Shown here piece by piece: positions 2,961-63,253 of a stretch of DNA of 64,000 bases. The notes beneath the pieces were generated by a model. That model was not told the origin of the DNA. It searched no databases and worked only from the letters and a program-made list of their open reading frames with translations. Position 1 is the first letter of the stretch. Each line of letters begins with the position of its first letter. The DNA comes from Octopus sinensis (lineage: Eukaryota). The stretch spans positions 164,907-228,906 of the forward strand of contig NW_021831846.1 of NCBI RefSeq assembly GCF_006345805.1. The letters run 5' to 3'. The position numbers and the translations under genes are program-made.

Positions 2961-3087
2961 GATGGTGGTTTGGAAGAAACTGATGTGACACAAGGTAGCA
3001 GGTTTAGCCGCTGGTTCAGTCAAACTGCCAACCATGACAACAACAGCAGGCGTTCCTCTATTGTTGAGGAGACAGGCTGTATACGAG
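2961..3087 (+). CDS. EIF4ENIF1: 4E-T exon: DGGLEETDVTQGSRFSRWFSQ...
   Basis: tttgtag acceptor, GTAGGT donor, phase 0 to 1, SRFSRWFS motif. Confidence 0.88.
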
Positions 3088-4844: not shown

Positions 4845-4878
<34 letters not shown>

Positions 4879-9728: not shown

Positions 9729-9772
<44 letters not shown>

Positions 9773-12543: not shown

Positions 12544-12583
<40 letters not shown>

Positions 12584-15500
12584 ATAATAACAAAGGGTAA
12601 AATTAATTAATTAAGAAGTAATTTATAATTTCACCAAGTAGAATTCGGTATGAAAAAAGGACCATTTCACGGTAAGTTTAAGTAATACTAATAAAAAGGG
12701 TTCAGCAAAGATTTGCTTCACCAGACACTGAAGTTTAGAAATAGCAGCCAAAAATCTTAGCTATTTCTTCTACTTTTAAAGTAGAAGAAATAGCTAAGAT
12801 TTTTGGCTGCTATTTCTAAAATTTGGTGTCTGGTGAAGCAAATCTTTGCTGAACCCTTTTTATTAGTGTGTGTGTGTGTGTGTGTGTGTATTTATTTATT
12901 TCTGCTTCCAAAATGCATGACCTGGTACCTGTTCTGCCAACGTTTGGACTGGTTTAACTTTTGCAGGCGTTCCCAACATCTGAACATCTCCCCGGCTGAA
13001 CTCTCGGCCCTTTGATGTCTCCGATGCCGCAAAGACATTATCATAAAACAGCCAACAACGGTGGAGCTGTGGTGGTGTGGCGTGCAGACCTCTACAAAGT
13101 TGAAGATCTCTGCCAACTTCGAGACCCCTCTTTCTGTTGCCCTTTGCCCCTCTAACCCCATGCCTGGCTACCAACAAACTGTGTCCTCCACTATCCACAA
13201 CCTCATCTCCTGTCTCCCTCCAGCCACATTATCTGCACTCCTCGCACTCCCACCCTTTGCTTCCTTCATGAAATCCACAAGCCCAACAACCCTGGCTGCC
13301 CCATCATCTCTGCCTGTAACTGCCCTACGGAACTGATCTTGAAATACCTTGACTTTTAGTATGAAAACCTACAAGTTAAATTGCTGAGTTGACTTAAAAC
13401 TGCTATATTCAAGGGCAATTACAGAAAAGTGAAATATAATGGGCTGCTTAGAGGCATAAGGTCCAAATTTTGAATGGGTGTACTTTTATTTGGGTACATA
13501 TCTGTGAAAGAGTGGTACTTGTTAATTAACTTGCCAGACACACTGGGGTCGAGGTCAGCAAGAGCAACTCCTTGCCACCCATGCAGCATAGAAATAAAAT
13601 AGATGTTATGAATTAAAAAAAAAATTTTTTTTTTAAATTTAAAGGGTATGACACAATATTTTGATATGTTTGTTAGCAGTCTTAACTGAAATATATTGGT
13701 TTCCAATTCTGGCACTGCAAGTTCGTGGAAGGGTGTAAGATGATTACATTGGCACCAGTGTCCAACTGGTACTTATTTTAACGACTCTCCAAATGAATAA
13801 TAATAATGAAATTATTGTATACAGTGCTCAGGTGCACCACAACTTGTCAGAAAGTGCATATAAAGTACATGCAGTAATGAAGAAATGTCTGGAAAGCGAA
13901 CAATGTATGAGTCAGATACATGCTTGTGTGTGTAAGGAGGGGAGAAAATCAGGTGTAGTGTTGGCGAATCTCAGAAAGCATGGAAGTTTTGAAGGATGCA
14001 GTGCTCCAACAACTAACAACTGATGCCGGCAGTTTGTTCCATGCTTCAGCAACTCTCAGCGTGAAAAAAAAAAATTCCTGAAGTCATGGGAGCTGTGCTG
14101 TTTTCTGACTTTGTAAATATGTCCACGGGTGTTAGATGGGTGGAGTTCGAAAAGGTGCTCAGAGTTATTGTTTGTACGATGGTTGATAATTTTATGGGTG
14201 TCTGCCAAGTCAGCTGCCAGATGTCGGAGTTTCAATGTGTCCATGCCCAGGGAAGTAAGGTGTTCAGGATATGGCAAATGAAAAGCAGAATTTGAACTAA
14301 ACGTAAAAACAGATGAAATGCCACTAAGCATTCTGTCCGGTGTGCTAATGGTTCTTGTAGTTCATCATTTTAGTCTTATCGGAAATATATGACAAGTATT
14401 TCATGTTATCATTAACATAGCCAAAATATATTGCTGCCATTAGGATAATCTAGATGTAGTGTAAACTTCCGTTTATGTAAAGCGATACTATGCCAAGGGA
14501 TCGAAGATTGCAGTTCTACCAAAATATGTGACAAATTCAAAGATAACAAAGCTCATATGTCTACCCCACTCCACCTCCAAATGTGGTGTGGATTCTGTTA
14601 ATTTTTCTGGTGATTGAAACCATTCCTTTCTTGACACTTTACCAGTTCATTCTTTAGTGTCAACATTTTTTCAAAAAACTTGGTAGCTGACCCCCCCCTT
14701 TTTTTTGTTTGTTTTTATTAACTAGCAGTATCGCCCGGCGTTGCTCGGGTTTGTGAGGGAAATAATTATAAAGCATTTTTAGAGTTATAGCCAAAAATAT
14801 GGTAAAATCGTAGACGCATCGTAGACATTTTTAGAGAGTTACTTTCCTTATATAATAGCGAAAAAAATGCATTAAAATGGAAAAAAATGTTAAATTTTTT
14901 TTAAATCGTAGACTCATCGTAGACGCGCGCTAATACCCAGAAGGGCTCGATATGAATCACGACTATAAGATACCCAGTTTTGGTTAAACTGCACCGCAAA
15001 ATGTGGGAGTAGTTAGGAATCTAAATCGTAGGAGACAGACACACAACTTCACTTTTATATATAAAGATATAAAACTGGACATCTTTTTTTTTTTTTTTTT
15101 CCCTCCTTTTGCAGGCATGCCAGGCCGTGTAAAGACGGTTGCTGAGATTGAAGCTGACCTCCACCACCAAATGAGTCCCAACGGTATGGTTACTGTAAGT
15201 CCTTTGGAAGTACCAGACTGCAGTGGTGATATGTCAGCCTTCAACAAACTCCTCTCTATGATGAAGGCAGCTGCTGTCGACAACTCTAAACCTCATGTAA
15301 GATAACCATCTCGTTATGCTCTCTTTCCTTATTCTTTCCTCTTCTCTCAATTCCTCTCTTTTATGTCAGTCCTTCCCTTTTTCTTTTTTTTTTTTGTGTG
15401 TTTTTGTATTAAACTGAAAACCATTTGAGAAAACATTTCACATAGGCGCAGGAGTGGCTGTGTGGTAAGTAGCTTGCTAACCAACCACATGGTTCTGGGT

Positions 15501-15611
15501 TCAGTCCCACTGCGTGGCATCTTGGACAGGTGTCTTCTGCTATAGCCCCGGGCTGACCAATGCCTTGTGAGTGGATTTGGTAGACGGAAACTAAAAGAAG
15601 CCTGTCGTATA

Positions 15612-15678
<67 letters not shown>

Positions 15679-18600
15679 TGTGTGTGTGTGTCTGTCCCCT
15701 AGCATTGCTTGACAACCGATGCTGGTGTGTTTATGTCCCCGTCACTTAGCGGTTCGGCAAATGAGACAGATAGAATAAGTACTGGGCTTACAAAGAATAA
15801 GTCCCGGGGTCGATTTGCTCGACTAAAGGCGGTGCTCCAGCATGGCTGCAGTCAAATGACTGAAACAAGTAAAAGAGTAAAGAATAAACCAAATGATCTT
15901 CAAATTCTTCAAACCTCTGTTGCTTGTTTCCTCTAACAGTTTTGCTAGATGGAACTGAGTTCATTAATGTCCTTGATCGAAGATCTTGGACACATGATGC
16001 TGAACATCTTGTGAATGAGGAATTAGCCAATATTGTAATGTAAATATTACCTGTCTTTGTGGGATTGTTGCTCTTTCCTCTCTCATATTTTTACTTCTCA
16101 CAATTATAGTTTTGAGTAGATTTCTACAAAAATGACTGTCAATTTTGAGATTCTGCTTGATATGTTAACAAATAAGTAATCCTGTCAGAAATAGAATTAA
16201 GTATGGAATAAAAATATCCATCCATCTTTTCCACCCATTATTCTGGGGAGGGTTGTCAGTTGAGTCCTCAGGCACCTCCTCCATAGGGTCCTATCACAAC
16301 TCTTATTACATTTTCCGGTTGGATTCTCAAGCATGACCAACTAAAACTATGGATATCATCCAACCATCTCGTTCTTGGGATGGCTCTCTTTACATCTGCC
16401 AGTTGGCTTGAAGAATCCATCTTGTGATTCTTTCCTTCAACATTATCAGATATCTGTATTACTGGAGCTGTAACCTTTCACTGTAGGGAAATAGTTGTAG
16501 CTTGACCTGCTGTGACTTCCTGATTTCTGAGTTATGCACTGTTGAATAGACTCAAGAGATTCATTGCAGAAAACCCTATTTCGGCTGTTTGTATTCAGGA
16601 TTGTACTCTTTGATCATTACCCAGCACTCATGACCATAAGTGGGGAGAAAATAGGTTAATTGTAATTTAAAGAAAGAAAATATTTTTATGAATTACAATT
16701 CTGGAATCTGTAAAGTTATTGCTTAATTGTTGCTTTTACATAATTTATACACTTTCAGAACAACTTTGTAGATACACTATAATTTCTGGTACCAACCCTT
16801 GGTACTGAAACGGAATAAACGGAATGGTGGTGCTGTCATGCATGCATGCATGCACACACACACACACACACACACACTATTATGGCAAATTTTATTAGCC
16901 TTTTTCCTGTCCTGTGTCACGTGAGACACAGGACATAATTCCCTAGCATGTCATCATATGATACACGTACCTAATTGTTTTTAAACCACCAGGGTCACTT
17001 GGGACTTATGAATGAAAGAAAAGCTTTATATTATTCAGAACAAAAACACATGGCTTACATAAGTCTGTAAACCAGCTAGGACGTTTAGGGTTAACTTATG
17101 AAAATGCTTTGGACAAGCAAAGGATTGTTCCAGCCTGCTGAAGTCTTAATTTCTTTAACATGCTACTGGGTTTGCCATTCACGTGAATACAGGCATTTTT
17201 AGGTAAATGCTTGTAGATGAGCTTTTTAGGGTATGATATGGCTGGGAGGTTTTCTCATCAAAGTTTGTCACATCTAAAATCCTAGTGTTGTTGTTGCTGA
17301 CACTCGTAGATTCATCTTTAGGTATCTCCAAAAATGGCCATTTGGCTGAATCGGAAGTCTCCCTCTCACCAGTGTACTACAACCATTATTTCTTGGACTC
17401 CCCCACTTCTTTCTCTCTTCCACTACTGTTCCAGCTAACTTCATACTCTCTGTTCCTAGTTGCACTAGTCCCATATAACTCTACCTCTATTAGATCTCAC
17501 TTCCCAGAACGTGTATTGAACTTTCCTCGACACTGTTATTGTTCACTTCTCTCCTTGTAGATATTGACTTACAGGTATTCAAATTGTCCATCAGCTGGAC
17601 AACTTGGACATAATTCTTACTGGTCTGGGACTGCTTACCCTTTCATTTTCATAAAGAAAAAGAAAATAATTGAAAATAGATGTAGGCATAGCTGTATGGT
17701 CATTTTCTTTGCAAATATGCCTTCAGGTTCTGCCCCACAATGTGGCCCCTTGGACAAGTCTCTTATGTCTTGTTAGGTTGACCAATGTTTTGTGAATGAA
17801 ATAGACAGTGTGGAAACCCATTGTGTGTTTCTCTGTCTTTACATTAGAAGCTATTCAAATGTTGTCAATGTCCTGTAACTTAGTGGTGCAATAAATAGAT
17901 ATTGCTAAAATAAGTACTAGACTTAAAAAAAAATAACAAAAAAAAATAAAATCAATGGAGTTGATGATTGACTAAGATGCTTTTCAAGGTGGTAGTATGG
18001 CTGCATTTTTGACAAACCTGTAAAAGTAAACTGAGGCCTGGCACCTGAGACACCTGTACTCGATTTGGTCTTAGTACCCACAAGCTTCAGCTGACAGTCC
18101 AGCAAATTAGCAATTTGTTTCACCTGATTAATACACAGAATTGTAAATCTGTGAATGATTTTGTATTATTTAAAATTTTTTTTGTCTTCTATCTTTCATT
18201 TTCTTCTTTCAGATTCCAGATCGCAGGTCACCTCCAAATCTTCCTGCTCAGCCTCCACCAACCATTCCATATTTAACATCTGGCCAAAATGAATTTTTGC
18301 ATGTAGGTTTAATTTGAATTGCCATTTCTATAATATATAGAAAAGTCTTATATACTTTCTATATTGCTCTTCACCAGTCCTCCCCTTAAGTAATTTTAGA
18401 AGTTTGCTCTTCAGAGATATGAGTTTAATGGTTGGAAATTGTACCATGTGCTACCCACAAATCTTTTTGTGCTGTGTGCAATATGCAGGGTATATAGCTG
18501 TAGAAAACCTGCCTTGTCCCTTCCATTACCATCTCAGCTGAAACTGCCTCTGACTCTGTAGTACAAATGTCTTGTTTCCATAAGATTTTAATGAAAATTT

Positions 18601-21600
18601 TCCACCAAACCTTAGTCACAATTTATGTTCCTAACACCAACTTAGTTATTTTACTAAATTCTTTGTTATATTTAAAATTAATTGAAAGAAACACATAGCA
18701 TCTCAAAATAAATATAGTAACGAAAGGGTTAATGAATTCATGCAAGCGTGGAAAAAATTAGGCCATTAAGATGATGGTTTTTTTTGTCTATCACTTGTAA
18801 ATTCAGTATTTTCTTCGTGAGCATGAACCCAATTATATTAAAAAAGGCTTCTCTTCTTGCATAGAGGTATGGATAACCTTCATGGTGTCGTCAGCTTTTA
18901 AGTGAAACATTACAACTTCCTTTCCAAGCTAATGAGATTAGAGATGAGGATATCTTTGGTGCCTTGCTTCAGAACTCTGCCATGATTTGAGCTGATGTTG
19001 GCTATGAATTTCAGCTATGGTGGTTAACTCTGTAAATGGCTAACTAGTTTTGGGACACAGTTAACTTGTGATAAGTCTGGTTCCACTCACTGATTTCATT
19101 ACTGTGTGGTATGATTTGCAGTTTGTGGTTGAGCAACTTGTGTCTCAACAAGATTTTGGTATCAGTTCTACTGCATGATGTCTTAGACAGGTGTCTTCTA
19201 ATATATCCCTGGGTTGATCAAAGCCTTGTGAGTGGATTTGGTAGATGGAACTGAAAGAAGCCTGTTGTGTGTGTTAGTGTCCCTTTGACTTTGTGTGAGA
19301 GTTAAAGTGTCACTGTCATACAAGCGGTGGCCTTTGTTTCCAGTCTTCTGTGAAAATGAAAATTTGTGTGGACTGGTGACAAGATGGGCATCAGTCATAG
19401 AAAACCTCGATAAACTCTGTCCAACCCTTGTAGGCATCGAGAAGTGGACTTTAAAATGATGATGATTTTCTAGTTGAGCCTAATGGTTAGCAATAGGTAC
19501 AGCATTCAAATGTGAAACTATATCCTAGACCATTTTTGTTTCTAAATTTACAGGCATTGAATCGCAACAAAGAACAGCAACTCCAGATTCAACAGCAGAC
19601 TCTGAATCAAATTCGAATGCAACAACAGCACCAACACCACCAGCACAACCAAGAACAGCAGCAGCAGCAAAAGTCCAATCAGCCACCAACACCACAGCAG
19701 CAACAACAACCGACACCTGTCTTGCAACAACCTACCTATGTGTCTGGAGTTACTCCAACTGGAAGTGGACAGCAGACCTCTTCTGATGCTATCCTAAACT
19801 TCATCAAACAGAACCCAGACATTATTGCAAAACCTGCATCACCGAACCCACAACTGGCAGCAGTTCTACAGCATGTCGGACACCGGAACCTTTCCCCTGG
19901 AGGACCTCCATTGCACCCTACAACATCTCAGTACCTGCAACAGAACTTGCTATCTGGCCAGCCTGGCTCTGTACACACCGCTCAGCCAAGAATCCCTTCT
20001 CCTATTAGTAAGTTTCCTCTGGTTCTCTTGTATTTAAAAACTACACACACAAAAGCAAATGTTATGATGGGGAAGAATTTCGGTAATATTGCTGCTACTT
20101 TTCCAGTTCTCCAAAGAATTCTTGGAGAGATGTAAGAATCTGTTAAAGATATTTATAACTAAGAACTAATACGGAAGTGAATATTTTTTTTTTTTCATTT
20201 AGTGAAAAACTCTTTCATTCTTTTATTTCTGAGCAATTTCAAATTTACAACAAAGTTCTAACATTTTGAAGATCAAGAATTTTTTTCCCCCCTATTTCTC
20301 TTCAACTTACTACTTACAGCAATTCTTGCAATTTCATAAATCTTTTATCAAAGCTGCTACAATAATATAATCGGTGTTTTTTAGGAGTCTTTGACACTTA
20401 GTGCTCTCCGGAATGATTAAATTTCCATAACTGCAGATAGATTTCGTCAGCCGGAGATAACTTGGAGTTAAACCACAAAAGCATATTTATTGCCACAGAT
20501 ACTAATACTGAAATGAACCACAATATCAATCTGGGAATAGTTTCTACTAGTACCATTGGTCTAGACCAGATCTCACGTAATCATATTACCAGAATGTTGT
20601 ATAGAAACTTCATTGCGCATTCAACTATATATTTGTTTGTCTATTGCACAATAGAGTAGAATCGATTTGTCTTGTATGATCTGGAGAAATGTAATTGAAC
20701 ATAAACGAATATCATACGATCTTAAGCGCTGAAAGTTTTCACATGCACAACTGTTCATCTTCAATTTGCCAATGGACTCAACAGATTTCTCTTTAATAGA
20801 TTTCTCTTTAGGAGCCTAAAGTCGTTTGAATTGCAAAAATCAGTTCAGCAAAAAGTAATGTTGTTTAGCCTCAGCTTAACCTTAACGGAGCAGACTTATT
20901 AATAGCCATTCCCCCTGTGTCCATTACACTTTTAAAAACCTTTTTAGGATTACATTATTCTGTGTTCGCCTTATATTATTTTAACTCCTTTTTAGCATTC
21001 AGATTTCTCTTCTCATTTATTCACATTGTTTTGAATTAATCAGTTATCTTGAAGCTTTGAGATTTCAATGATGTGATTTAGTTTTAGAATGACATTGTAG
21101 GTAGGTGTGAGAGGTCAAATTTGGCCAGCTTAGATATAAAATAGCTAGAATATTTGGGCCAGATATGGTTGGATTAAATCCTAAAGGGTTAAGATAGTGG
21201 AAGTGATTTTGTACTTTTAAAAGATCAGATGACCACATAGGAGTTTCCTTAATGGTCTGGAGCCTAAAATATAATCTGTTACTGGGATAGGATTCATCAA
21301 ATTTTGTTTTTCTCTCTGTAACTATATGTTTGGTGCTACTTAGGCATATAGTCTACTGCAGTATCCATAGCATTATGTAACAAATTTTAATTTTTTTCCT
21401 GTTTTTGGTCAGTGTTATGTCCTATTTGCTTCTATTTAGAAGTCAAAGGAAATGACTACTATTCCCCTTCAAACTTTGTGTTTGTGACTGGGACATCAAT
21501 GTTTTGAAACTGACCTATTTCCCATTACATTTCAGACAGATTCAGCATCTCAGTTGCTGAAGCAGAAATATCATTATAGGAAATATTCTGCTCACTGCCA

Positions 21601-24600
21601 CAGATTTGCTTGTCAATTGCTTGACCGTAACCAGTTGAACATGTCCCTTAATGGCTGACAATATGTGCATCCCTGATTATGAGCAGGAATTGTTGGGGAG
21701 CCTCATAGCCATGTGTTCTTTGGAATTTGGATAAATGTAACAAGAGCAAAGTTTGAAGAAATTATTAACCATTTTTCGTACTTTCTTGGTGTAAGCAAAT
21801 AGGAAATAATAGTTGCTATCCAAGGACAAAAATTGTGTTACACAGGGTAGTCTATGCTGGGAAACTACTTGATCTGAGATGCTAAAGTATAAATGGCCTG
21901 GTAGACTGCTTGCTAAAGTGGCAGCATTTGTTCTTTATATTTCAACTAGCAGTATCGCCCGGCGTTGCTCAGGTTTGTAAGGGAAATAACTATATAAGCA
22001 TTTTTAGAGATGTAAAGTATAATAGCCATCTCAATATGGCTAACCACAAAGGGGGGGTGTTACTGTAGCTTTTTACGTTCTGAGATTTAATAATGCATTT
22101 TTATAGAGTTACTTCCCTTATATAATAGCAAAAAAATGCATTAAAAATGGGGAAAAATGATGGTAAATTTTTTTTTTAATCGTAGACTCATCGTAGACGC
22201 GCGCTAAATACCCAGAAGGGCTCGATATGAATCACGACTATAAGATACCTGCTTTTGGTTACACTGCACTGCAAAATGTGGGAGTAGTTAGGAATCTAAA
22301 TCGTAGGAGACACACACAACTTCACTTTTATATATAAAGATGTCCTTTTACAATGTACTGGACTGCAAAAATGTATTGATAATTTTTGTTTTCTCACTTT
22401 TAATTTAAAATTTAACTAATGTACAAATTTTTTTTTATTGCAGTGTTTAGTCAACAACCACCTGTACACTTAAGTGCACCTGCACCTGTCCATCCTGGGC
22501 CCCTGGTGCAAAGCAGTCTTGGTCAGCCTATTAGTAATTTGACGGTAATAATCACATTCATCCTTTTTTTTTCTTTTTTAATTGCTTAGCCACAGGTCAC
22601 AGCCTTCATTGAGATCGGTTTAACTTCCCACCTATTCCTGGAATTCATTTTATGAGTGAGTGATCTTGGAGCTATGTGAACTGTATTTTTGCTCAAAAAC
22701 TCAACCCCCTGCCTAGTCAGGAATTGAAACCACTATCCTACATGTATGAGTGCAGCCACTATCCACTAGGCTATGCACCTTCACTATTAGTAATATATAA
22801 AGCAAGACAGTTTCTGAACATTTAGATTGCTTAATAAATTTTTCACTGTTTGTTACAGTTGCTAATAAACGCTAAAGCCATTTCTGAAGATCACTTGGAC
22901 ATGATAATGGAAATTTTAGGTGTTTATGTCATTAATCATTGAAATTGGTGTTTGCTTAATGAATTGATGAAATTATCTTTTTCCATTCTTCAGAGTGCAA
23001 CCAACATACGACCTCACAGTGTGCTTCCGCGCGTGAACAGCCCCAAGGATATGATGTCCTTTAAGAAGGATATGGAAGAACATGAACGATTTCTTAGAAA
23101 ACAACAAGAAAGGTCTTTGTTTTTATTATAAAGAGTCTGACTTTAACCCTTCAGCTTTCAGGTTACTCAGTCGAATACAAGGCTTATTTATCCACATTGC
23201 TTTGGATTAATCATGCATTCTTGTAGCTCCAAGATTTTGATGATTGTTTTTAGAATATTGCAGGGTAGGTGTGAGCGGTCAGGTCTGTCCACTTTGAACA
23301 TAAAAGCAGACTAAAGGGTTAAGCGTTTACTGTTTTGATAGATGGTGATGGCTTTGTCTGATGACTGGTTGAAGCCACAACCTAATAACAGTAGCTGGGT
23401 TATATTTTATTTTATCAACAGCTCTGTGCTGAATCTCGTAAAAAAACCATTTGAATGTCCAGTGGCTCAGTCCACATGGACTTAACCCTTTAGTGTTCAG
23501 ATTATCCTATCAAACAAAATGCTTCTTGATTCCCATTGATTTGAATTAATCATGCATTATCTCATATCTTCAAGATCTTGATGGTGTAATTACCTAATGT
23601 AGAATAACATTGTAGGGTAGGTGTGAGAGCCTGGATCTGGTCAGTTTGAACATAAAGCAGATTAAATATTTTGGCCGGTTTAAATACTAAAGGGTTAAAT
23701 AAGTGGCATAAGATGGTATATCATCACTGCGAGAGGCTAAAGAAGTATTAAGCTCTTGAGTCTTAGCTTGCAGAGCTGAATACTTTCTCTCAGATTCTTT
23801 GAGTGTATTTGTTTTCAGTTATTAATTGAAGAGGAAGTCATTGGTGATGGGTGAATATTGATTATTTAACTGGTTTAACATTTGAACCTATTATAGATCT
23901 TTTCGTCTATTTCAAACTTTTCTTGCAATTTCAATGAAATGCTCATTTACTCGAAGGGTAAATTTTTCAACTCTATTCCTACTTGTATATCATGGCAACT
24001 TGGCAACTTGGTTGCTTAACCCTTTCATTACTATATTTATTTTGAGATGCTCTGTGTTTCTTTCAATTACTTTAAATATAACAAAGAATTTAGTAAAATA
24101 ACTTAGTTATCATTAATCTAGTGTTAGGAACATAAATTGTGACTAAGATTTGGTGGAAGATTTTAATTCAGAACTTATGAAAACATGACATTTGTACTCA
24201 GAGCCAGGGCCGGTTTCAGCCGGGTTGGTAACGAAAGGGTTAATGAATTTGACATTTCTGCAGGTTAGGGAGAGAACATGTATTTGCAAGTCAATGATGC
24301 CTGTGTGTGGAGGGAGCACAATTCTTGAAGGATTGTGTAATTTTATTTTGGTGGTGTGAGAAATAACTCTTGTCGAGTATGTATATTTGGTAACTGAAGT
24401 TAGGGAGTTTGTCGAAGGAAGGGTTTTCTTTTTGTGAACTTAATGACTAACCTTTTGTTTTACAGATCCAAGTCTCCTGTCTCTATTAGCCGAGGAATTC
24501 CAACACCAGTCAATATGGGTCCCAAAGTAAGTAAAAATAAATAGATGTGCTTTTGAATTGATGACTCACTGTAATAGCATGCATCATTGTCAATCCTAAC

Positions 24601-27600
24601 ACACTTGATATATGAACTGAAGAAGTTCCCATGCTGTCAGTCCACTCAGAAGTAGCTATCAGATCTCTTGATCCTTCTAATATAATCAATGTAAAAACTA
24701 AGGTGTGTCACATTTTGACCCCCCCCCTCTCTCTCACTATTCATTGAGGCTTCTACTATTGCTCATGCTGAGGTGAGAGTAGTAGTAGGTATAGACGGTG
24801 AGGGTGGTGGCGGAGAGAGAGAGAGACAAAGAAACTTAGGGTTAGAGTTGAAGTTTTTATTAAAAGTGGTAGTGTTGATGGTGGCAGTGGGAGTAATAAC
24901 GAGAGGGACTGGACGAACGTACTGGACGGACATGGTGAACACAATTCTCTTATACACACATTTAGCCTTTTTGTGATGGTAATAGTAATAGTATGAGCTG
25001 TAGTAGTGATAGAGGCGGCGATGGTGGTGGTAGTAGCCAAGGCGGTCAGGGCTGATGGCGAGAGTAAGTGATATGAAAAATGGTGGTGGAGGAGAAGGCA
25101 GCAAAGTCAAAAGTATTGATGGTGGTGGCATCAGAAGTCTGGATGGTGTGTGTATGGCAGATGTGGGGGCGATGGTAGTAATGTTTATCATGCAGCTTTG
25201 ACATAAGTTCCAAGTCGACAAATTGTATCATTGTTTTAATGATAATTCTTCATTGCTTGAAAAATATTGAGTTTAATAAAATATAATATGAAGTGTCGTT
25301 GTTGGGCCCAAGGCCTAATGAAGATCCCTCCACTGGAGCTAGCTTAAAAACGGCGCTATCAGGCGGCTTTTAAGCTAGTTTTTAATATTTTAAACTAGTA
25401 TACTCGACCCAATTTTGAGATGCAGTTAAATTGGTTTCATGAAGCAGTAACTTTATTAAAGTGGTTATTTCAAACGGCACGTAAAAAGCACCATCCGTTC
25501 GTAGTTGTTGCCAGCCTCACCTGGCCCCCGTGCCGGTGGCACATAAAAAGCACCATCCGATCGTGGCCATTTGCCAGACTCGTCTGGCACCTGTGCCAGT
25601 GGCACATAAAAGCACCCACTACACTCATGGAGTGGTTGGCGTTAGGAAGGGCATCCATCCGTAGAAACATTGCCAGATCAGACTGGGCCTGGTGCAGCCT
25701 TCTGGCTTCCCAGACCCCAGTTGAACCGTCCAACCCATGCTAGCATGGAAAGCGGACGGTAAACGATGATGATGAATTTAAATTATCGTCTTTTCACATC
25801 CATTTCCCATTGATCAGCTGAGTGTTTCAGATCCAGCGATCTGCAGGACTGTGCTGAGCTCCAATATTAGCTTTTGCATGGTTTCTATGGCTGGGTGCCC
25901 TTCCCTCAGCCATTTGCTTGACAATGTGTACTGGATGCTTGTTCTTACATGAATCTATTGCTGATTTGTCTCAAAACTCCTAATTACAGCCAAAATCTGA
26001 AATATAGAGTTATTTAAACATTATTTAAATATCACCTTTTATGAGTTATAAAATCCATATTATATAACTTGCTAAACACTCGTGTTCAGGTGGTGGGGAC
26101 AAGTCTTATTTTATTTGATTTATCCTTTTTCTAAGTGATTATTATTGAATATGCTTGAATTGGAATGAGAGAAAAAAAACCCCAAAAAAACAAAAAAAAA
26201 ACTAGTCATTGGATTTTGGTATGATTAGGTCTGGTTTTGTCTGAAAATGTTTATTCATTAATTGCTTTGACTCCATGTGGAACCTGAGCTAGCAACAAGA
26301 AACCTCCAGCTTTCTTGATCTTTGGCAACAGATTGCAGTTGTTGCTAGATGTAGCTGCTTTCAGTTTTTGTGGACCTTTTCCATTTTGTTTTCGATCTAT
26401 CCAAATTCTGCCCCCAGGCCTGGTACTGCAAGCTTATAGAGCTTCATCTCTGCAGCAATTTAAGCTCTCTTTGGGGTTTGCAACAGTTCTAATCTCAGTG
26501 AGATTATTCCACATTGTAGCTAGTTTTTGCTTTTCACTTCAGAGCTCCTTATGCAATCTCTGAAGATCTCTTATCTGGCCCAGTTTCATGTTCTCTTTGT
26601 GTATCAGCAGCAATGTAAGATATTGATAGTGCAAGGTTACTAACTCTACATCTACCACCCTTCTTTCTCAACTGGATTTAGGATTGGCTGTGGTTAAAAA
26701 AATTTTGGAAGATAATCTTTTAAAAGAAACCATTGCTTTTACTTTTGCTGTCCAGCATAAAACAGCTGCAAATTGGAAAATCTAGTTCAGTCAATCATGT
26801 TATGGGTTAATGTTTGCATATATTTTAATACTTGTTGCCTTCTATTATTATTTTTGCACCTAGGGTGCATTATAGGATTTGATCCCAGTTCTTGACAAGT
26901 ATTTGATAGAATTTGGATTTTAAAAGGCCAAAACTGTAATGTATTTTGTCTCTAATGCTCTAAAAATTCTGAATCCACTGCTACCATTCATATTTAGTCA
27001 CTATTTCTATCAAAATCTGAAGCTTTTAGAATATAAAAAAGGTTGTGAAAATAAGATCATAGATGAGAGATTTGAAAAATATATCCCCGGAATTTGGGGA
27101 ACAAAGGATTTGTATTATGAAAATGTCGAACAGTGTCCAACAAGTGATTATCTTGTGAGATCTTATCTGATCACTAATGCAGTAATGAGATTTACATTGA
27201 TATTTTGATTTCAATGTGTGTGTATAGGTAGAGGCAACAGTCTTGTTGGGATGGTATTCTATGGTGCTGGCAAAATGGTTAAATTGCACTCTGTTGTCTC
27301 ATAGCTTGAGACAGTTTGAAAATAAAGACAAAATTGTCTTGGCATGATTGCTTTTGACTTAATTGTCCTTTAATTAGAGTTGGCCTGGGGGCTAAATAGC
27401 ATAATTGTTACACAAACAGTAGCAGTTTTTTGGACATAGGATAAATTAAAAAATGGGGTAAATCGAGTGATGTTCAACAGGATGGGATAGTAGCAGCACT
27501 AGAGTTCCAATCAGCTCAATTTAAATGAAATCCCTTTCAGGGAATCTGAAAACTAAGGGGTTTAGAATAACAATAATATTCCACTTTGGAAACTTCCATT

Positions 27601-30600
27601 ACTGAATTGAATTTTGAATGGCTTGAAATTTTGTCATGTGGGAAATGATGGTGATGACTTTGGCATTAGACACTAGAATATGGGGTAGAGATGCAGCTAA
27701 TGTTAATACACCTCCCATGGATGGGATTTAAATTCAGAACTCAACCCTTTGCCTGTCCAAAGCATTTTCATAAGTTTGTGCTAAACATCCATACTTATTT
27801 TCACACTTTTTAATTATTGGTGGTTAATTTGAATTAGTTGATGGGTTGTGATCAAGTTGATAGAATTGTTAGTGCGCTGGGCCAAATGCTTAGCAGTATT
27901 TCATCTGTTTTTTTATATTCTGAGTTAAATTCTGCTGAGGTCGACTTTGCCTTTCATCCTTTTGAGGCTGATGAAACTAGTACCAGTTGAGCACCGGGAG
28001 TGGGGGGGGGGGTGTCAATGCGATTGGCTAACCTAGTGGCTACCAACCTTTTCACTACCAAGGACCCTTTTTATTTAAATGAGTTTTCCCATGGATCCCT
28101 TTTAATATGTTTATCCAACCCCATGGTTCCGGGTTCAGTCCCACTGCGTGGCATCTTGGGCAAGTGTCTTCTGCTAAAGCCCCGGGCCGACCAATGCCTT
28201 GTGAGTAGATTTGGTAGATGGAAACTGAAAGAAGCCTGTTGTATATATGTATATATATGTATGTTTGTGTGTCTGTGTTTGTCCCCCTAGCATTGCTTGA
28301 CAACCGATGCTGGTGTGTTTACGTCCCCGTCACTTAGCGGTTCGGCAAAAAGATACGGATAGAATAAGTACTGGGATTACAAAGAATAAGTCCCGGGGTC
28401 GATTTGCTCGACTAAAGGCGGTGCTCCAGCATGGTCGCAGTCAAATGACTGAAACAAGTAAAAAAAAAATATATATATATATATATATATGAAATTTTGA
28501 ATTTCACAGACTCCCAGTACTATCTTTAGTGGACCACAGGTTGGAAACCACTGGACTAACCCTTTGACCCCAAATTTAAGGCCTTGTACCTTTAATAAAA
28601 AGGAATATCTGATCAGAATGTATTGCACTCAATAAAAACATGTATCCTGTGATCTGCATAGCACATTTTAAACATTGTACACAATTTTTACTACAACTGA
28701 TGCTTGCATCACATGACACACACACACACACACACACACACGCATGCGTTTGTTTGAGAATGTGCATCACATAATACAGGTTTTTATTGTGTGATGCATC
28801 CCATGATCATATATTACTCGCCAACTAAACCAAATCTCCTTCCCATGTATCACATATGAAGCACACGCACATACATTCCCCTATTTATGTTCTTAGTAGA
28901 ATGTCTATTGTATATGCTTCGTAGATGCCAGGGAAATGCCCTGTGTATCACATGATACACTGGACAGGTTGGAAGCACTCCGTCAGTTACGACGACGAGG
29001 GTCCCGGTTGATCGAATCAACGGAACAGCCTGCTCGTGAAATTAACGTGTAAGTGGCTGAGCACTCCACAGACACGTGTACCCTTAACGTAGTTCTCGGG
29101 GATATTCAGCGTGACACAGAGAGTGACAAGGCCGGCCCCTTGAAATACAGGTACAACAGAAACAGGAAGTAAGAGTGAGAGAAAGTTGTGGTGAAAGAGT
29201 ACAGCAGGGATCACCACCATCCCTGCCGGAGCCTCGTGGAGCTTTAGGTGTTTTCGCTCAATAAACACTCACAACGCCCGGTCTGGGAATCGAAACTGCG
29301 ATACTATGACCGCGAGTCCGCTGCCCTAACCACTGGGCCATTGCGCCTCCTTACTGGACAGGTAACGGGTGAATGTCACAGGTATAATAAAACACTGCAA
29401 GGCATTTTTGCCCAGTATTTTACCAATTCTGCCATCTACTATACTTTTCCATTGTTACGTTTCTGTTGTCCTAGTGGTATATATATATTTATTGTAATTT
29501 TACATTTTTTAGACTTCAGTATCGGTGGCTTTTACACCAACATCAGTGATTAGGAAGATGCATTCAGAAAAGGCTGTGGAGAAAGAACGCCAGGCCAAGC
29601 AGGATGGATGTAGTTTAAACAGTACGTTATTTCCTTTTTACATTTATATTTTCCGAATTTTGTTCTTTGCTCTGATAGCATATCTTTATATATAAAAGAG
29701 AGGTTGTGTGCTGTCTGTCTCCTACGATTTAGATTCCTAACTACTCCCACATTTTGCGGTGCAGTTTAACCAGTATCTTGTAGTCATGATTCATATCGAG
29801 CCCTTCTGGGTATTAGCGCGCGTCTACGATGAGTCTACAATTTAAAAAAAAATTTACACTCAATTTTCCCCATTTTAATGCATTTTTGGCATATATAAGG
29901 GAAGTAACTCTCTAAAAATTTATTATTAAATCTCAGAACGTAAAAAGCTACAGTAACAATATGTGGTTAGCCATATTGAGATGGCTATTATACTTTACAT
30001 CTCTAAAAATGCTTATATAGTTATTTCCCTTACAAACCCGAGCAACGCCGGGCGATACTGCTAGTTGTTTACAAATTTACTTTACAAACCTGAATATTTG
30101 GACTTGATCATTAACCCTTTAGCATTTAAAGCAGCTATATCTGGCCCAAATATTCTTGTTTTATGCTCAAACCGGCCAAATTACCCTACAGTATCATTCT
30201 AAAAATAAACAACCTCATCATCGAAATCTCGGTGTGAATGAATGTCTTACATCTGACAGAAAAATCTGAATACTAAAGGGTTAAACGTTTGATAATGGTG
30301 TTAACTAGTTTGACAATTCAACAGTTTTTTATTGTCACCCAGTGCAGTAATGTCTGTAGACTAGTCCAGATAGCTGTGTATGAGTTCAATGAAAAGATGT
30401 GCTTTACTTAAAAGCATTTGATGCAATATGCAATTTCTAAGTATCAAGGCTTTGAAGTAGGCTGTGCAAAGGTTTAAAAAGAAAAGTAACAAAAATTCTT
30501 TATCCTTGGGAAGTCTTGAATAGACATAATGAATGTATGAATTGCTAAATCCGTTGTCTTGGGACATTTCACCCGAATTACGTTCCCCTTGACAAGTAAT

Positions 30601-33600
30601 AGGATATGTCTTGACCCTACAGCATTCAGATTGCTCTGGCAACTGTAATGTTTATTTATTCATTGTTTTGATGAAATGATTGCTTATTGTTAGCCTGACA
30701 TTGTAGGATGGGACAGATCTGGCCAATTTGAACATGAAATGAGTAAAATAGTTGGCCTGAATGCTACCAGTTAAAAATTTAAGACACAGCACATGTTGAG
30801 CCAACAAGAGTCTCTCTGAAGCTGTTCAGCTTACTAAAACTAGCAGTCAAATCTTCCTCAGATCACATACTGTCATTTTAAAGAATATACTGGACAATGT
30901 AGTCTATGAAAATGGACAGTAAGGGTGGTCATTGCTGGAGCATTTTTGATCACATCTGCTCTGTTAAGGCTAGATCCCAACACAACATGGTATCTATGAC
31001 TAAATCTGATTTTGTTTCTTCAGTTGATCTCTACTATTACCTCCTTAACCTCTTAATTTCATTAACTTTTTTTTCTCTTTTTTTAGGTTACTCAGCTCAA
31101 AAAACTCTCATGAAAAACCAAATGTACATAGACAGTGTCCTCAAAGATTCCTACAGCAACAATGTCTGTTCAGACAGCTCTCGAAGCAGTCCTCTGTCAC
31201 TCATCTGTGACAAAAAAGACATTGGTCAGGGCCCCTCAGTGAATGGCCACCCTCTGCCAAGGGGCCAGGACGGATTGCCGAACCAACAACATTCTGGACA
31301 AACACCTTTCCTCCCTCAATCACATCCCAACCTCCCAATAGACTCTAGCATCATTGGCGGCAGCCTGAACATAAGTGGCTCTTGCAATTCTTCGGCAACA
31401 CCGTCACCTTCGTCAGCCAAGTCTTCAAAACTGACCCCTCACAAGGGCCCTATGTCTACTGCTGGATGTGGTGAGATCCTTGCTGCTCAACTCTTCAACC
31501 ATGAACAACAGGTAGGAACTGTTTTACTGTCTCTTAATCCACCACAACTTTCACTGTCATCTCACTTAATCTGCCTCCAGCACCACCACTCGTATCTCTT
31601 AATCCAGCACCACCACCACCACTCGTATCTCTTAATCCAGCACCACCACCACCACCACCACATCTCTTAATCCAGCACCACCACCACCACCACTCGTATC
31701 TCTTAATCCAGCACCACTCGTATCTCTTAATCCAGCACCACTCGTATCTCTTAATCCAGCACCACCACCACTCGTATCTCTTAATCTAGCACCACTCGTA
31801 TCTCTTAATCTAGCACCAGCACCACTCGTATCTCTTAATCCAGCACCACCACCACTCGTATCTCTTAATCTACCACCACCACCACCACCACTCGTATCTC
31901 TTAATCCAGCACCACCACCACCACCACTCATATCTCTTAATCCAGCACCACCACCACTCGTATCTCTTAATCCAGCACCACCACCACTCGTATCTCTTAA
32001 TCCAGCACCACCACCACTCGTATCTCTTAATCTAGCACCACCACCACCACCACTCGTATCTCTTAATCCAGCACCACCACCACTAATCCAGCACCACCAC
32101 CACTCGTATCTCTTAATCTAGCACCACCACTCGTATCTCTTAATCCAGCACCACCACCACCACTCGTATCTCTTAATCCAGCACCACCACCACCACTCGT
32201 ATCTCATAATCCAGCACCACCACCACCACTCGTATCTCTTAATCTAGCACCACCACCACCACTCGTATCTCTTAATCCAGCACCACCACCACCACTCGTA
32301 TCTCTTAATCTAGCACCACCACCACCACCACTCGTATCTCTTAATCCAGCACCACCACCACCACTCGTATCTCTTAATCTAGCACCACCACCACTCGTAT
32401 CTCTTAATCCAGCACCACCACCACCACCACTCGTATCTCTTAATCTAGCACCACCACCACTCGTATCTCTTAATCTAGCACCACCACCACCACTCGTATC
32501 TCTTAATCCAGCACCACCACCACTCGTATCTCTTAATCCAGCACCACCACCACCACTCGTATCTCTTAATCCATCACCACCACCACCACTCGTATCTCTT
32601 AATCTAGCACCACCACCACTCGTATCTCTTAATCCAGCACCACCACCACCACTCGTATCTCTTAATCCAGCACCACCACCACCACTCGTATCTCTTAATC
32701 TAGCACCACCACCACCACCACTCGTATCTCTTAATCCAGCACCACCACCACCACTCGTATCTCTTAATCTAGCACCACCACCACTCGTATCTCTTAATCC
32801 AGCACCACCACCACTCGTATCTCTTAATCCAGCACCACCACCACTCGTATCTCTTAATCCAGCACCACCACCACTCGTATCTCTTAATCCAGCACCACCA
32901 CCACTCGTATCTCTTAATCCAGCACCACTACCACTCGTATCTCTTAATCCACCACCACTCGTATCTCTTAATCCAACACCACCACCACCACTCGTATCTC
33001 TTAATCCAGCACCACCACCACCACTCGTATCTCTTAATCCAGCACCACCACCACCACTCGTATCTCTTAATCCACCACCACCACTCGTATCTCTTAATCC
33101 ACCACCACCACTCGTATCTCTTAATCCAGCAGCACTTCCACCTTTTTTTGTTTAAATATTTTCATCTGAAGCAGTTTTTAATGAATTGGGTGAGTCAATG
33201 GTACTCTCAATATGTGAATGCAAATGAGCTGAGACAGGTGTGGGTGGGTGGGAAACTAGATGCAAGAATCAGATTTTGTATATAAGACTACACTGGTACA
33301 GGCATTTCATGCATATGCATAGAGGATGTCAATTCCATGAAGTGTTGAATACTCAAAGTAAATGGAACTTGTGGTCAAGACGATAACCTGGGAGGAAGTG
33401 GTGAAGGTTGATCTCCAGATTTTTGACCTTCATAAAAGAATTGACAAAGAACTGCAATGAGTGGTGACATGTTGAAGACTGCTCCACTTGTGCAAGCGTA
33501 GCGGTATGGATGTTGAAGTTGAGATGTATGGTATATCTACATTGGGTCCATTGCTCATTGTGTTCCATTTATCTCAATTTATTGCTCTTCTCAATCACAA

Positions 33601-34390: not shown

Positions 34391-37300
34391 TTACTTGGAA
34401 GAGGATGCGTGGCGTTTCGTCATATAATAGCAAAATATTAAATAAAACATATGCATATATACATACATGCCCGTCAAGTTCAACCTTCGCATATTCGCCG
34501 TGTCAGGCCGAAAACGAAATGTTCCCAAGATAAGAAAATCTTTCTAATCTAATTCATCCCGTAATCTGTACCAGTAATATTCTCATGCAAATTTGTCTGA
34601 TCTCTAGTGGTTAAGCTGTTTATTATTATTATTATTAGTATTAGTATTATCCCTTTGATCCCCAGTCGACAATTTGTTTATTATTATTATTAGTATTAGT
34701 ATTTTCAGCTTCGCCTCGTATTGCATATTCTGTATAATTTATTAGTTATTGTTGACCATCGGTTTCCGGCCTCGTGTCTCGCTAAATACAGAATAGATAT
34801 TTAAGTTTCTCCATACAGGGGTTTTTCAATGGCGGCCGATTTTCACGGGGTTCCACTATTCCCTTCTCTCTCTCTCCCTCTTTTACGTTGTCTGTCCTCC
34901 CCCCTTCCATTGCTAAGAGCATTTTTAAGCCAGCCTGTCAAGTTCAACCTTCGCATATTCCCGGTGCACCCGCCCTTGCCCACCCCCACCACCAATACCG
35001 GATATCTCTATATTTTTGCTCCATCTATACCGGATGTCGCTTCTCCCACCACCATTATAGGTGTCTACTCTTCGAACCCCCCTCTTCAATATGCTATTTC
35101 ACCATGCATTACCCCTCTCGTGATATCCTACGTTCTACTTGTCAAGAACCTGTCATCGTTTCTCCGAACACCCCTCTCCACTGGTGCTCCCCTATATTTC
35201 TGCACCCTCCCCCCACATAAAAAGCACCATCCGAACGTGGCCGATGCCAGCACTGCCCCGACTGGCTTCTGTGCAGGTGGCACATAAAAAGCACCAACTG
35301 ACCGTGGCCGATGCCAGACCCCTCTGGCACCTGTGCAGGTGGCACGTAAAAAGCACCCACTACACTCGCGGAGTGGTTGGCGTTAGGAAGGGCATCCAGC
35401 TGTAGAAACACTGCCAGACCAGACTGGAGCCTGGGGCAGCCCCTGGCTCCCCAGACCCCGGTCGAAACCGTCCAACCCGTGCTAGCGCGGAAAACGGACG
35501 TTAAATGATGATGATGATATATGTATGTACATACGTACCTACATCTATATGTATACATACATGCATATATAGGTACAGGACACCAAAAAAAACGTCGAAC
35601 ACAATGAGAAACGTAAACATAAACACAAAACCAAGGAAACGGACATCATATATACATACATACATACACACAGAGGCATATTTGTTGAAAATGCATCTAA
35701 ATTTGAAAAACTTAATTGTTTAAGATAAATTTATTTACAAATATACCAAACTAGTTTCAGCAATATTTTTTGTTCATCAATGGTAAAAATTTAGAATTAT
35801 GAATTTTAAATTTATTTTAAACAATTACAAGTTTTTCAAATTTAGGTACATTTTCAACAAATTTGCCTATAAATTTTCCTCTTATGTGTGTGTGTGTGTG
35901 TGTGTGTGTTTACATCCCTATAACTTAGCAGTCTGGCAAAAGACCAATAGAATAAGTACTAGGCTTACAAAGAATGTTCTGGGGTCAGTTTGTTTGACTA
36001 AAGGCAGTGCTCCAGCATGGCTGACTTGAAACAAGTAAAAGTGTGAACCGGATGCTTTTTATGTTATAATAATCTTTGCAGTCTAATTAGTTTTTTTAAT
36101 CTGTATTAAATTGCTCTCATCTGGGATTTCTTCTTTGTTTCAGAATCCTAGTCCTTCTCAAACTCTACCTAGCAGTCCGTGTGACCAGTCTAAGTCACTA
36201 CGGGCACTAATGGGTCAAGGTATGATGCAGAATCTCACTTCGCAACTCCTTCAGTCTGGTATTTCAAACACAGCGACCAGTGCAGCCCAGCAACAACTCT
36301 CATCAAGCTTGGCTGGACGACCAATTGTTAAAGGTAACATTTCAATAAATTCAGTGATTCATACTTGAGAAACGGGCATTAAGAACTTCGAGTACTTACT
36401 CTTCGCTTCTATTTAGGGTTAGCTGTACCCATGATCCCTTTTACTGAGAGTCTGTGATTGGGGAAAGGTGGAAGGTATCTTTTAAACCAGAGGCCTGGAC
36501 CAAACACTTGCAACACAGGACCCAGCTAAATACATCCAAAAGCCAGGTGGTACTGTGAAATGGGGTGACAGTCTGTGATCCAGGCAGGCCATGGTTGGAT
36601 TTTGAATGCAAGGAGCTGGAACAAAAATTGCAAGGCATCTCTTCTGGCATTCTTATAGTTCTGCCAATCCAATGTCTCTTTTTTTTTTAAATATAGCTTA
36701 GGTGCGAGTGTAGCTGTGTGGTAAAACGCTTGTTTCCCAGTTATGTGGTTCTGGGATCTGACCCACCTTGGGCAAGTGTTTTTGGCTGTAACCTTGGGCT
36801 GACGAAAGCCTTGTAAATAGAGCTGGTTGACAGAAGCTGAAAGATGTCCTCTGTGTGTGTGTGCGCATATATGCATTGGTTGGATGCTTGACAAGAGCTG
36901 GTGTGTCAGAGGGTTGCACCAGCTTTGGCATGGTTTCTCCAAGTAGATGCTCTTCTTAATGCCATCTGCTTTACAAGTTATGTCTTCTACTGTGTACTGA
37001 CACTAGTGAGGTCACTAAGTAACTCATAAGACAAGACCTCCCTCCTCAACTGAGAGGGGAAAAGAATTAGAGGAGGTGGCTTCGTTCCGGGTGATGAGAG
37101 GCTAAAGTATGATTGAGGGATAAGATTGAGTGTCTTGTTGTAGGGGAGGTATGTAGCTACGCCAGTTGGGAAAGAAAGAGGATAGTGAAGGTGTCAAGAG
37201 AAGTGTTATGAGTGGGTAAATAAGTTTCTGGGAATATATAGCACAGTGGGGCAGATAGATGGGGGTAGAGGGAAATGCAATGATTAGTGAATGCATTGGA

Positions 37301-63200: not shown

Positions 63201-63253
63201 TTTCCCATACCAACACCGGTTGTCAAGCTTTCGCGGAGGACAAATGCACGCGT

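What the first reader, a model, noticed from the sequence alone, without database searches (positions are those of the whole stretch)
21946..30064. Inverted Helitron pair brackets a 390-nt in-frame exon block: predicted 4E-T circRNA with an endless ORF
Seen: a Helitron on the - strand ends 103 nt before the acceptor of exon 22444, and a highly similar copy on the + strand starts 61 nt after the donor of exon 29621, so they are reverse-complementary in the pre-mRNA. The enclosed exons total 101+119+61+109 = 390 nt (130 codons), enter and exit in phase 1, and the back-splice junction codon is A+TG = ATG with no stop in frame. A third copy (14722-15067, -) ends 47 nt before exon 15115 and would give a 1116-nt circle, also in frame. 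Established: reverse-complementary intronic repeats close to exons promote back-splicing and exon-block skipping, and stop-free circles can undergo rolling-circle translation. Inference: Helitron-driven circularisation or in-frame skipping (20007 to 31087) of the module carrying the FTPTSVIRKM motif.
Basis: partly seen in the sequence, partly recalled or inferred. Interest (0 to 1): 0.72.

Follow-up and report, generated by a model that had tools for sequence, protein, structure and literature searches.

The report
Inverted Helitron pair around 4E-T exons
Two copies of a small transposon sit in opposite orientation just outside four coding exons of a 4E-T (translation repressor) gene, a layout known to favour circular RNA, but nothing here shows that a circle is made, and its "endless" reading frame is an ordinary by-product of old intron positions.

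Summary
Two ~390-bp non-autonomous Helitrons lie at 21946-22340 (-) and 29683-30064 (+). They are 94.7% identical at aligned bases. They end 103 nt before the acceptor of exon 22444 and start 61 nt after the donor of exon 29621. As RNA they can form about 361 intermolecular base pairs. The four enclosed exons total 390 nt, enter and leave in phase 1, and contain no stop. The gene is a 4E-T orthologue.

The interpretation remains an untested prediction of a known kind. Given three copies in this gene, an inverted pair around an in-frame block is expected 45% of the time. The in-frame property and the split A|TG codon are also present in the annelid Owenia, so they predate the Helitrons. Stop-free circles are common: 14% of human circRNAs have a host-frame rolling-circle ORF. 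Helitron-derived complementary matches around circRNAs are already reported in Drosophila.

One feature is unusual. All three intragenic copies lie within about 100 nt of an exon (P about 4e-4, post hoc).

Most likely outcome: low-level by-product back-splicing or skipping, damped by ADAR. This is a new member of a known kind, of low to moderate interest.

The parts
21946..22340 (-). Non-autonomous Helitron copy (395 bp) in intron E-F. It is the upstream arm of the inverted pair. Its 5' TC end lies 103 nt before the acceptor of exon F.
29683..30064 (+). Non-autonomous Helitron copy (382 bp) in intron I-J. It is the downstream arm. Its 5' TC end lies 61 nt after the donor of exon I.
14722..15067 (-). 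Third Helitron copy, a variant with a shorter 3' half, in intron B-C. It lies 47 nt before the acceptor of exon C and can also pair with the + copy (299 bp, ddG about -335 kcal/mol).
22444..22544 (+). 4E-T exon F, 101 nt, phase 1 to 0. This is the predicted back-splice acceptor. The peptide (M)FSQQPPVHL... is conserved in Owenia.
22994..23112 (+). 4E-T exon G, 119 nt, phase 0 to 2.
24466..24526 (+). 4E-T exon H, 61 nt, phase 2 to 0.
29513..29621 (+). 4E-T exon I, 109 nt, phase 0 to 1. This is the predicted back-splice donor. It carries the FTPTSVIRKM motif, which matches the end of the Pfam EIF4E-T profile.
19554..20007 (+). 4E-T exon E, 454 nt. It ends in A, the first base of the split Met codon. 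It would be the donor of the predicted skip isoform.
31087..31511 (+). 4E-T exon J, 425 nt. It would be the acceptor of the predicted skip isoform.
15115..15296 (+). 4E-T exon C, 182 nt, phase 1 to 0. It would be the acceptor of the alternative 1116-nt circle. It carries the DMSAFNKLL motif conserved in Owenia.
18213..18302 (+). 4E-T exon D, 90 nt, phase 0 to 0.
21118..21195 (.). Second, weaker inverted match across the same two introns (partner 30107-30182, 80 nt, 81%). It is part of a MITE-like repeat.
18518..18732 (.). Competing inverted pair (partner 24016-24239, 226 nt, 84.5%). It brackets exons E-G, which total 674 nt and are not in frame.

Best explanation
Two copies of one subfamily of a ~390-bp non-autonomous Helitron inserted independently, in opposite orientation, into introns E-F and I-J of a 4E-T (EIF4ENIF1) orthologue.

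In the pre-mRNA the two copies are reverse complements. They can zip into a duplex of about 360 bp that brings the exon F acceptor and the exon I donor to within about 165 nt of each other.

Shown here: the sequences, their termini, the exon structure and phases, the pairing energy, and the gene identity.

Inferred: the duplex sometimes forms before the flanking introns are removed. It would then yield low-level back-splicing (a 390-nt four-exon circle, or more rarely the 1116-nt circle using the third copy) and/or in-frame skipping of the 130-codon block that carries the FTPTSVIRKM motif. A long perfect duplex of this kind is also a prime ADAR and helicase substrate, which would weaken it.

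The stop-free frame and the junction ATG are passive consequences of an ancient phase-1/phase-1 exon block. They are not adaptations. Any translated product would be a minor by-product.
For: - Pair identity and termini.
- Cofold: 361 intermolecular bp, ddG -423 kcal/mol, longest helix 77 bp, no intramolecular pairs retained in the upstream arm.
- Canonical splice sites and a continuous 783-aa ORF over ten exons, extended to the stop codon over 14 exons.
- Cross-phylum support for the exon junctions from Owenia.
- Phases and the split A|TG codon are conserved in Owenia.
- No intra-intronic competitor for either arm, and a second inverted match across the same two introns.
- Complementary matches promote both back-splicing and skipping (PMC8330042).
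- Complementary matches around Drosophila circRNAs are enriched for Helitrons (PMC12404201).
- 14% of human circRNAs carry host-frame rolling-circle ORFs (PMC9242994).
Against: - No RNA data of any kind could be consulted.
- The downstream arm is transcribed 7.3 kb after the upstream acceptor, so co-transcriptional removal of intron E-F (2.4 kb) may usually win.
- The flanking introns (2.4 and 1.5 kb) are not long for this gene.
- Two upstream (-) copies compete for the single (+) copy, and other inverted pairs cross the region.
- If the source is an octopus, circRNAs are reported as low overall, consistent with ADAR repression (PMC9699675).
- In Drosophila several studies argue that complementary matches are not systematic drivers (cited in PMC12404201).
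Confidence: 0.55

Rival explanations
1. The pair is inert. The Helitrons are neutral intronic insertions. Linear co-transcriptional splicing, RNA helicases and competing structures prevent the long-range duplex from influencing splice-site choice, so no circle or skip isoform rises above noise.
For: Inverted orientation around an in-frame block is expected by chance in 45% of trials with three copies. There are four copies of the family in 64 kb, so such pairs must be common genome-wide. The arms are 7.3 kb apart. CircRNAs are reported as low in octopus (PMC9699675).
Against: The match is far longer and stronger than the 13-40 nt matches that suffice in worms and minigenes (PMC8330042). It lies 61-103 nt from the splice sites.
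Confidence: 0.3
2. The main molecular consequence is dsRNA biology rather than circularisation. The ~360-bp intronic duplex is hyper-edited by ADAR, and possibly diced into small RNAs. It may act as an ADAR-recruiting element for the neighbouring 4E-T exons, and editing in turn suppresses back-splicing.
For: Uninterrupted helices of 77, 50 and 38 bp within 361 paired bases. In octopus most A-to-I editing lies in introns and 3' UTRs with hairpin structures, and the authors link ADAR to low circRNA levels (PMC9699675).
Against: The organism was not established with tools; the octopus-like SINE is recognised from memory only. No editing data were available. This rival is compatible with the best explanation rather than exclusive of it.
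Confidence: 0.3
3. The pair is maintained by selection because the 390-nt circle is translated by rolling-circle translation into a concatemer of the 130-residue 4E-T module. Alternatively, the skip isoform lacking it has a regulatory role in P-body or mRNP assembly.
For: The frame is stop-free, with an ATG at the junction and other in-frame ATGs. The module contains the conserved FTPTSVIRKM motif. All three intragenic Helitrons are unexpectedly close to exons.
Against: The in-frame property predates the Helitrons. The arms differ by about 5% plus indels, with no sign of constraint. Rolling-circle products are reported to be mostly unstable and of low abundance (PMC9242994). Nothing specific on 4E-T circRNAs appeared among the ten listed papers, judged from titles and abstracts only.
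Confidence: 0.03

Closest known systems
Exon circularisation driven by reverse complementary matches (inverted Alu pairs in human; short matches in C. elegans zip-2; Helitron-enriched matches around Drosophila neuronal circRNAs)
   Same: Inverted copies of one transposon family lie in the two introns that flank a block of internal exons, close to canonical splice sites, with very strong predicted pairing. The same matches are known to promote skipping of the enclosed exons (PMC8330042). Helitrons are already reported as a source of such matches (PMC12404201).
   Different: No back-splice junction has been observed here. The match is unusually long (about 360 bp) and unusually close to the exons (61 and 103 nt). 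The host is probably a mollusc, a group in which repeat-driven circularisation has hardly been studied.
Rolling-circle ORF circRNAs (for example circPSAP, circPFAS and circABHD12 in Fan et al. 2022, PMC9242994)
   Same: The circle length is a multiple of three, it lies in the host reading frame, has no stop codon, and has in-frame ATGs.
   Different: Translation is wholly hypothetical here. No IRES-like element, m6A site or peptide evidence was examined. The property follows from conserved intron phases.
Non-autonomous animal Helitrons
   Same: 5' TC, 3' CTAG (CTRR), a short GC-rich palindrome 12 nt from the 3' end, insertion between A and T without target-site duplication, and no terminal inverted repeats.
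   Different: There is no Rep/helicase ORF, since the element is about 390 bp. The 3' hairpin is short: a 6-bp stem with a bulge, -4.5 kcal/mol, not better than shuffles.
4E-T / EIF4ENIF1 (human 4E-T, Drosophila CG32016)
   Same: Colinear matches to Pfam EIF4E-T. The C-terminal peptide matches the 4E-T peptide in PDB 6F9W. The gene is colinear with the Owenia gene whose model carries PF10477.
   Different: The protein is highly Q/H-rich and divergent. No single piece reaches Pfam's gathering score, and the whole protein is rejected by HMMER's filters. The N-terminal eIF4E-binding part lies outside the window.

Membership tests
Helitron (non-autonomous) | 5' terminus TC and 3' terminus CTRR | tested here: met
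   All four copies start TCTTTATATATAAAAG. The three complete copies end CTGCTAG.
Helitron (non-autonomous) | Insertion between A and T, with no target-site duplication and no terminal inverted repeats | tested here: met
   A precedes the TC in four of four copies and T follows the CTAG in three of three. The flanks are otherwise unrelated.
Helitron (non-autonomous) | Subterminal GC-rich hairpin about 10-12 nt from the 3' end | tested here: inconclusive
   CCCGAGC/GCCGGG forms a 6-bp stem with a bulge, 12 nt from the end, at -4.5 kcal/mol and z = -1.0 against shuffles. It is lost in the copy with a C>T change.
4E-T / EIF4ENIF1 | Match to Pfam PF10477 (EIF4E-T) | tested here: inconclusive
   Three colinear partial hits, each below the 28.5-bit cut-off: exon A to profile 362-395 (16.4 bits), exon C to 433-476 (12.3 bits), and the block to 634-661 (22.9 bits, E 4.9e-5). 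The whole protein gives no hit.
4E-T / EIF4ENIF1 | Conserved C-terminal LSM14-binding peptide | tested here: met
   The last exon, 45590-45777, matches PDB 6F9W chain B (4E-T peptide) with E = 0.0016: LKWFDSDSL...KVFTVDELE against AKWFGSDML...KVISVDELE.
4E-T / EIF4ENIF1 | Orthology to a gene annotated as EIF4E-T in another phylum | tested here: met
   The Owenia fusiformis locus L001 has an upstream model with PF10477, directly followed by P0001, which aligns to the block. Colinear matches include GSRFSRWF, DMSAFNKLL, PSPIMFSxQPP and PTSVIRKM.
4E-T / EIF4ENIF1 | N-terminal canonical eIF4E-binding motif YxxxxL-phi | not testable with these tools
   The first exon in the window corresponds to profile position 362. 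The N-terminus lies upstream of the window, and no convincing motif was found in the window.
circRNA locus flanked by reverse complementary matches | Reverse-complementary sequences in both flanking introns | tested here: met
   404-column inverted alignment with 361 predicted intermolecular bp.
circRNA locus flanked by reverse complementary matches | Canonical acceptor and donor at the predicted back-splice junction | tested here: met
   tttttattgcag|TG at 22444 and ACA|gtacgt at 29621.
circRNA locus flanked by reverse complementary matches | Observed back-splice junction (reads or RT-PCR, RNase R resistance) | not testable with these tools
   No transcriptome data for this genome are reachable. 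The organism itself could not be established.
Rolling-circle ORF circRNA | Circle length divisible by 3 with a frame free of stop codons and containing a start codon | tested here: met
   390 nt. Frame 2 is open around the circle, with an ATG at the junction and further in-frame ATGs. The 1116-nt circle is likewise open.
Rolling-circle ORF circRNA | Evidence of cap-independent translation (junction peptide, polysome association) | not testable with these tools
   No proteomic or ribosome-profiling data are available.

The most novel reading that the evidence does not exclude
This Helitron subfamily is not randomly placed. It either targets exon-proximal intron positions or is preferentially retained there, with its 5' end facing the exon in three of three intragenic copies at 47, 61 and 103 nt. 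The resulting very strong complementary match would then have been co-opted to produce a regulated in-frame 4E-T circle or skip isoform. That product would concatemerise or remove the conserved FTPTSVIRKM module, which probably corresponds to the PatL1-binding site, in an animal whose ADAR activity would tune the switch.
Probability: 0.05. Interest if true: 0.65.

Novelty: new member of a known kind. Interest (0 to 1): 0.25.

Why it matters
If the circle or the skip isoform exists, this would be a clean, easily tested case of transposon-driven back-splicing outside the usual model organisms. It sits in a gene that organises mRNA silencing complexes. The duplex is so long that it would also report on the antagonism between ADAR editing and circularisation.

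As it stands it is a well-formed prediction and not a discovery. Inverted repeat pairs around in-frame exon blocks are expected by chance in a repeat-rich genome. The stop-free frame carries no extra information. Helitron-derived matches around circRNAs have been reported before.

Tried and rejected
- Homologue search with a 423-aa Q-rich piece of the protein: no hits. A trimmed 371-aa query found a single relative, from Owenia.
- Pfam on the 423-aa and 783-aa models: nothing, although the pieces hit.
- PDB sequence search with the 423-aa piece and with exon A: nothing.
- Search for an eIF4E-binding YxxxxL-phi motif in all six frames: only spurious matches. The N-terminus is outside the window.
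- Organism identification. The SINE at about 27860-28000 looks like an octopus SINE from memory, but a full-text search for three of its substrings found no paper. No tool holds eukaryotic genomes for comparison, so 'cephalopod' stays a lead.
- Literature on EIF4ENIF1 circRNAs: among the ten listed papers, nothing specific was apparent from titles and abstracts; none was opened.
- Mapping FTPTSVIRKM to human residues 695-713, the PatL1 site in PMC7263148. This could not be verified in Kamenska et al.. It rests on the Pfam profile position (634-661 of 663) and on my recollection of the human sequence.
- The idea that the junction ATG is special was rejected. It is the normal split Met codon, shared with Owenia.
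- The idea that the sequence between Helitron and exon belongs to the element was rejected. The flanks of the four copies are unrelated.
Full report
OBSERVATION

The repeat pair is real. The repeat finder and blastn both show that 21943-22341 and 29682-30067 are reverse complements. The alignment covers 404 columns at 89.9% identity including gaps, with a 106-nt stretch at 99%. At aligned bases the two copies are 94.7% identical, K2P 0.055.

A third copy lies at 14722-15067 (-). A fourth, with a variant or truncated 3' end, lies at 62909-63208 (+).

In a four-way alignment every copy begins exactly at A|TCTTTATATATAAAAG. The three complete copies end ...CCCGAGCAACGCCGGGCGATACTGCTAG|T. The flanks are unrelated, and there is no target-site duplication and no terminal inverted repeat. 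This is the Helitron signature (TC...CTRR, inserted between A and T). The subterminal hairpin is in the right place but short and not statistically distinguishable from shuffles. At about 390 bp the elements are non-autonomous.

GENE AND EXONS

Ten exons with canonical AG/GT boundaries join into an uninterrupted 783-codon frame:
- A 2961-3087
- B 9846-10526
- C 15115-15296
- D 18213-18302
- E 19554-20007
- F 22444-22544
- G 22994-23112
- H 24466-24526
- I 29513-29621
- J 31087-31511

Four more phase-compatible exons reach the stop codon at 45778-45780: 36144-36333, 42294-42695, 44983-45204 and 45590-45780.

Three pieces hit Pfam EIF4E-T colinearly, each below the gathering score. They match profile positions 362-395, 433-476 and 634-661 of 663. 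The last exon matches the 4E-T peptide crystallised with LSM14 (PDB 6F9W chain B, E = 0.0016).

The only database relative is a partial protein of the annelid Owenia fusiformis. It aligns across the E|F, G|H and I regions through PSPIMFSxQPP, ERFLxKQ..RxKSP and PTSVIRKM. In the Owenia genome it lies directly after a gene model that carries PF10477. The upstream window exons also match that locus colinearly, through GSRFSRWF and KTVAExEAD...DMSAFNKLL.

The gene is therefore a 4E-T orthologue, and the four enclosed exons are genuine coding exons. The N-terminal eIF4E-binding part lies upstream of the window.

ARITHMETIC

Exons F-I total 101+119+61+109 = 390 nt. They enter in phase 1 and leave in phase 1. 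The circular frame has no stop, the junction codon is A+TG, and the junction peptide is ...QDGCSLN-M-FSQQPP. The C-I block is 1116 nt and also stop-free. Skipping from 20007 to 31087 is in frame. The distances are 103, 61 and 47 nt as stated.

HOW MUCH OF THIS IS BEYOND CHANCE

I dropped three elements at random, with random orientation, into the gene's real intron lengths. An inverted pair in different introns arises in 74% of trials. One bracketing an in-frame block arises in 45%. 31 of the 78 possible internal exon blocks are in frame. So orientation and frame carry no information.

The frame is also older than the Helitrons. In Owenia the corresponding block is likewise entered in phase 1 and left in phase 1. 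The intron even splits the same Met codon as A|TG. The ATG at the back-splice junction is thus the ordinary Met codon of the linear mRNA, because exon E also ends in A.

Proximity is the one unexpected feature. An inverted pair with both members within 103 nt of its block arises in 0.17% of trials. All three copies within 103 nt of any exon arises in 0.04%. In all three the 5' TC end faces the exon. This is a post hoc statistic on one gene, and I could not test it genome-wide.

PAIRING POTENTIAL AND COMPETITION

Co-folding the two arms as RNA gives 361 intermolecular base pairs and ddG of about -423 kcal/mol relative to the separately folded arms. Uninterrupted helices reach 77, 50 and 38 bp. 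The third copy pairs with the + copy over 299 bp, ddG about -335 kcal/mol.

No copy of opposite orientation lies within either flanking intron, so nothing sequesters an arm locally. A second, weaker inverted match (21118-21195 with 30107-30182) crosses the same two introns.

Competing cross-intron pairs exist:
- 18518-18732 with 24016-24239
- 10810-10978 with 18526-18732
- 6555-6793 with 25517-25775

All are shorter and more diverged. A likely branch site (ctaat) and the polypyrimidine tract of exon F lie in the 103-nt gap, outside the duplex.

MECHANISM AND ITS LIMITS

It is established that complementary matches in flanking introns promote both back-splicing and skipping of the enclosed exons (PMC8330042). 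In Drosophila, matches around neuronal circRNAs are enriched for Helitrons (PMC12404201). Stop-free circles can be translated in rolling-circle fashion, and 14% of human circRNAs have such a host-frame ORF; their products are reported to be mostly unstable (PMC9242994).

The locus therefore meets every sequence-level precondition. It is an instance of a known kind and not a new principle.

Several points argue against efficient circularisation:
- The downstream arm is made 7.3 kb after the upstream acceptor.
- The flanking introns are not long for this gene.
- A duplex of this length is an ideal ADAR substrate.

The window carries a SINE that I recognise from memory as octopus-like. I could not confirm this. 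In Octopus vulgaris circRNAs are reported as low overall, which the authors relate to ADAR, and editing concentrates in intronic hairpins (PMC9699675). Helitron expansion is documented in that genome (PMC13282606).

My best estimate is low-level by-product circle and/or skip isoform, with hyper-editing of the arms. An inert pair is the main rival. A selected, translated circle is unlikely.

CONTENT OF THE MODULE

The 130-residue block ends with AFTPTSVIRKMHSEK, the most conserved stretch shared with Owenia. It is matched by the last positions of the Pfam profile.

A conserved C-terminal motif of human 4E-T (residues 695-713) is required for PatL1 binding and contributes to P-body localisation (PMC7263148). 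I infer, but could not verify, that this is the same motif. A skip isoform would then lack PatL1 binding. A rolling-circle product would repeat the motif.

VERDICT

This is a new member of a known kind, with interest of about 0.25. The exon-hugging placement of the Helitrons is the only feature that deserves a genome-wide follow-up.

Noticed in passing
window 14722-15067, 21946-22340, 29683-30064: All three intragenic Helitron copies lie 47, 103 and 61 nt from an exon boundary, each with its 5' TC end facing that exon. Under uniform random insertion this has P of about 4e-4. The statistic is post hoc, and the cause is unknown: insertion bias, retention, or luck.
   Followed up: partly
window 31565-33142: A minisatellite of about 50 copies of a 30-33-nt unit (CACCACCACTCGTATCTCTTAATCCAGCAC) starts 54 nt after the donor of 4E-T exon J.
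   Followed up: partly
window 30113-30287; also 21100-21195, 23143-23219, 23482-23558, 23616-23676: A MITE-like repeat with TTAACCCTTTAG...CTAAAGGGTTAA ends (piggyBac-like TTAA target) lies directly after the + Helitron. Related copies are in neighbouring introns. One of them forms a second inverted match across the same two introns.
   Followed up: partly
window 15478-15874, 19148-19250, 28112-28463; 27860-28000: SINE-like repeats lie in direct orientation in three introns of the gene. One SINE fragment (…gaggtcgactttgcctttcatcc…) looks like an octopus SINE from memory. This is the only clue to the organism, and it is unconfirmed.
   Followed up: partly
window 58314-59135 (-): A long open exon on the minus strand encodes a chitin-binding Peritrophin-A domain (Pfam CBM_14, 27.1 bits, above the cut-off), followed by an N/G-rich low-complexity tail.
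   Followed up: partly
L001 (Owenia fusiformis GCA_903813345.2, CAIIXF020000012.1) 1-13200: The Owenia 4E-T gene appears to be split into two overlapping gene models: 1-10143 with PF10477, and 10001-13200 (P0001, labelled partial). Exons H and I of the window are a single exon in Owenia.
   Followed up: partly
window 9846-10526 and 19554-20007, 42294-42695: The 4E-T orthologue carries very long poly-Q, poly-H and poly-T tracts. These make HMMER reject the full-length protein even though individual exons hit the EIF4E-T profile.
   Followed up: no
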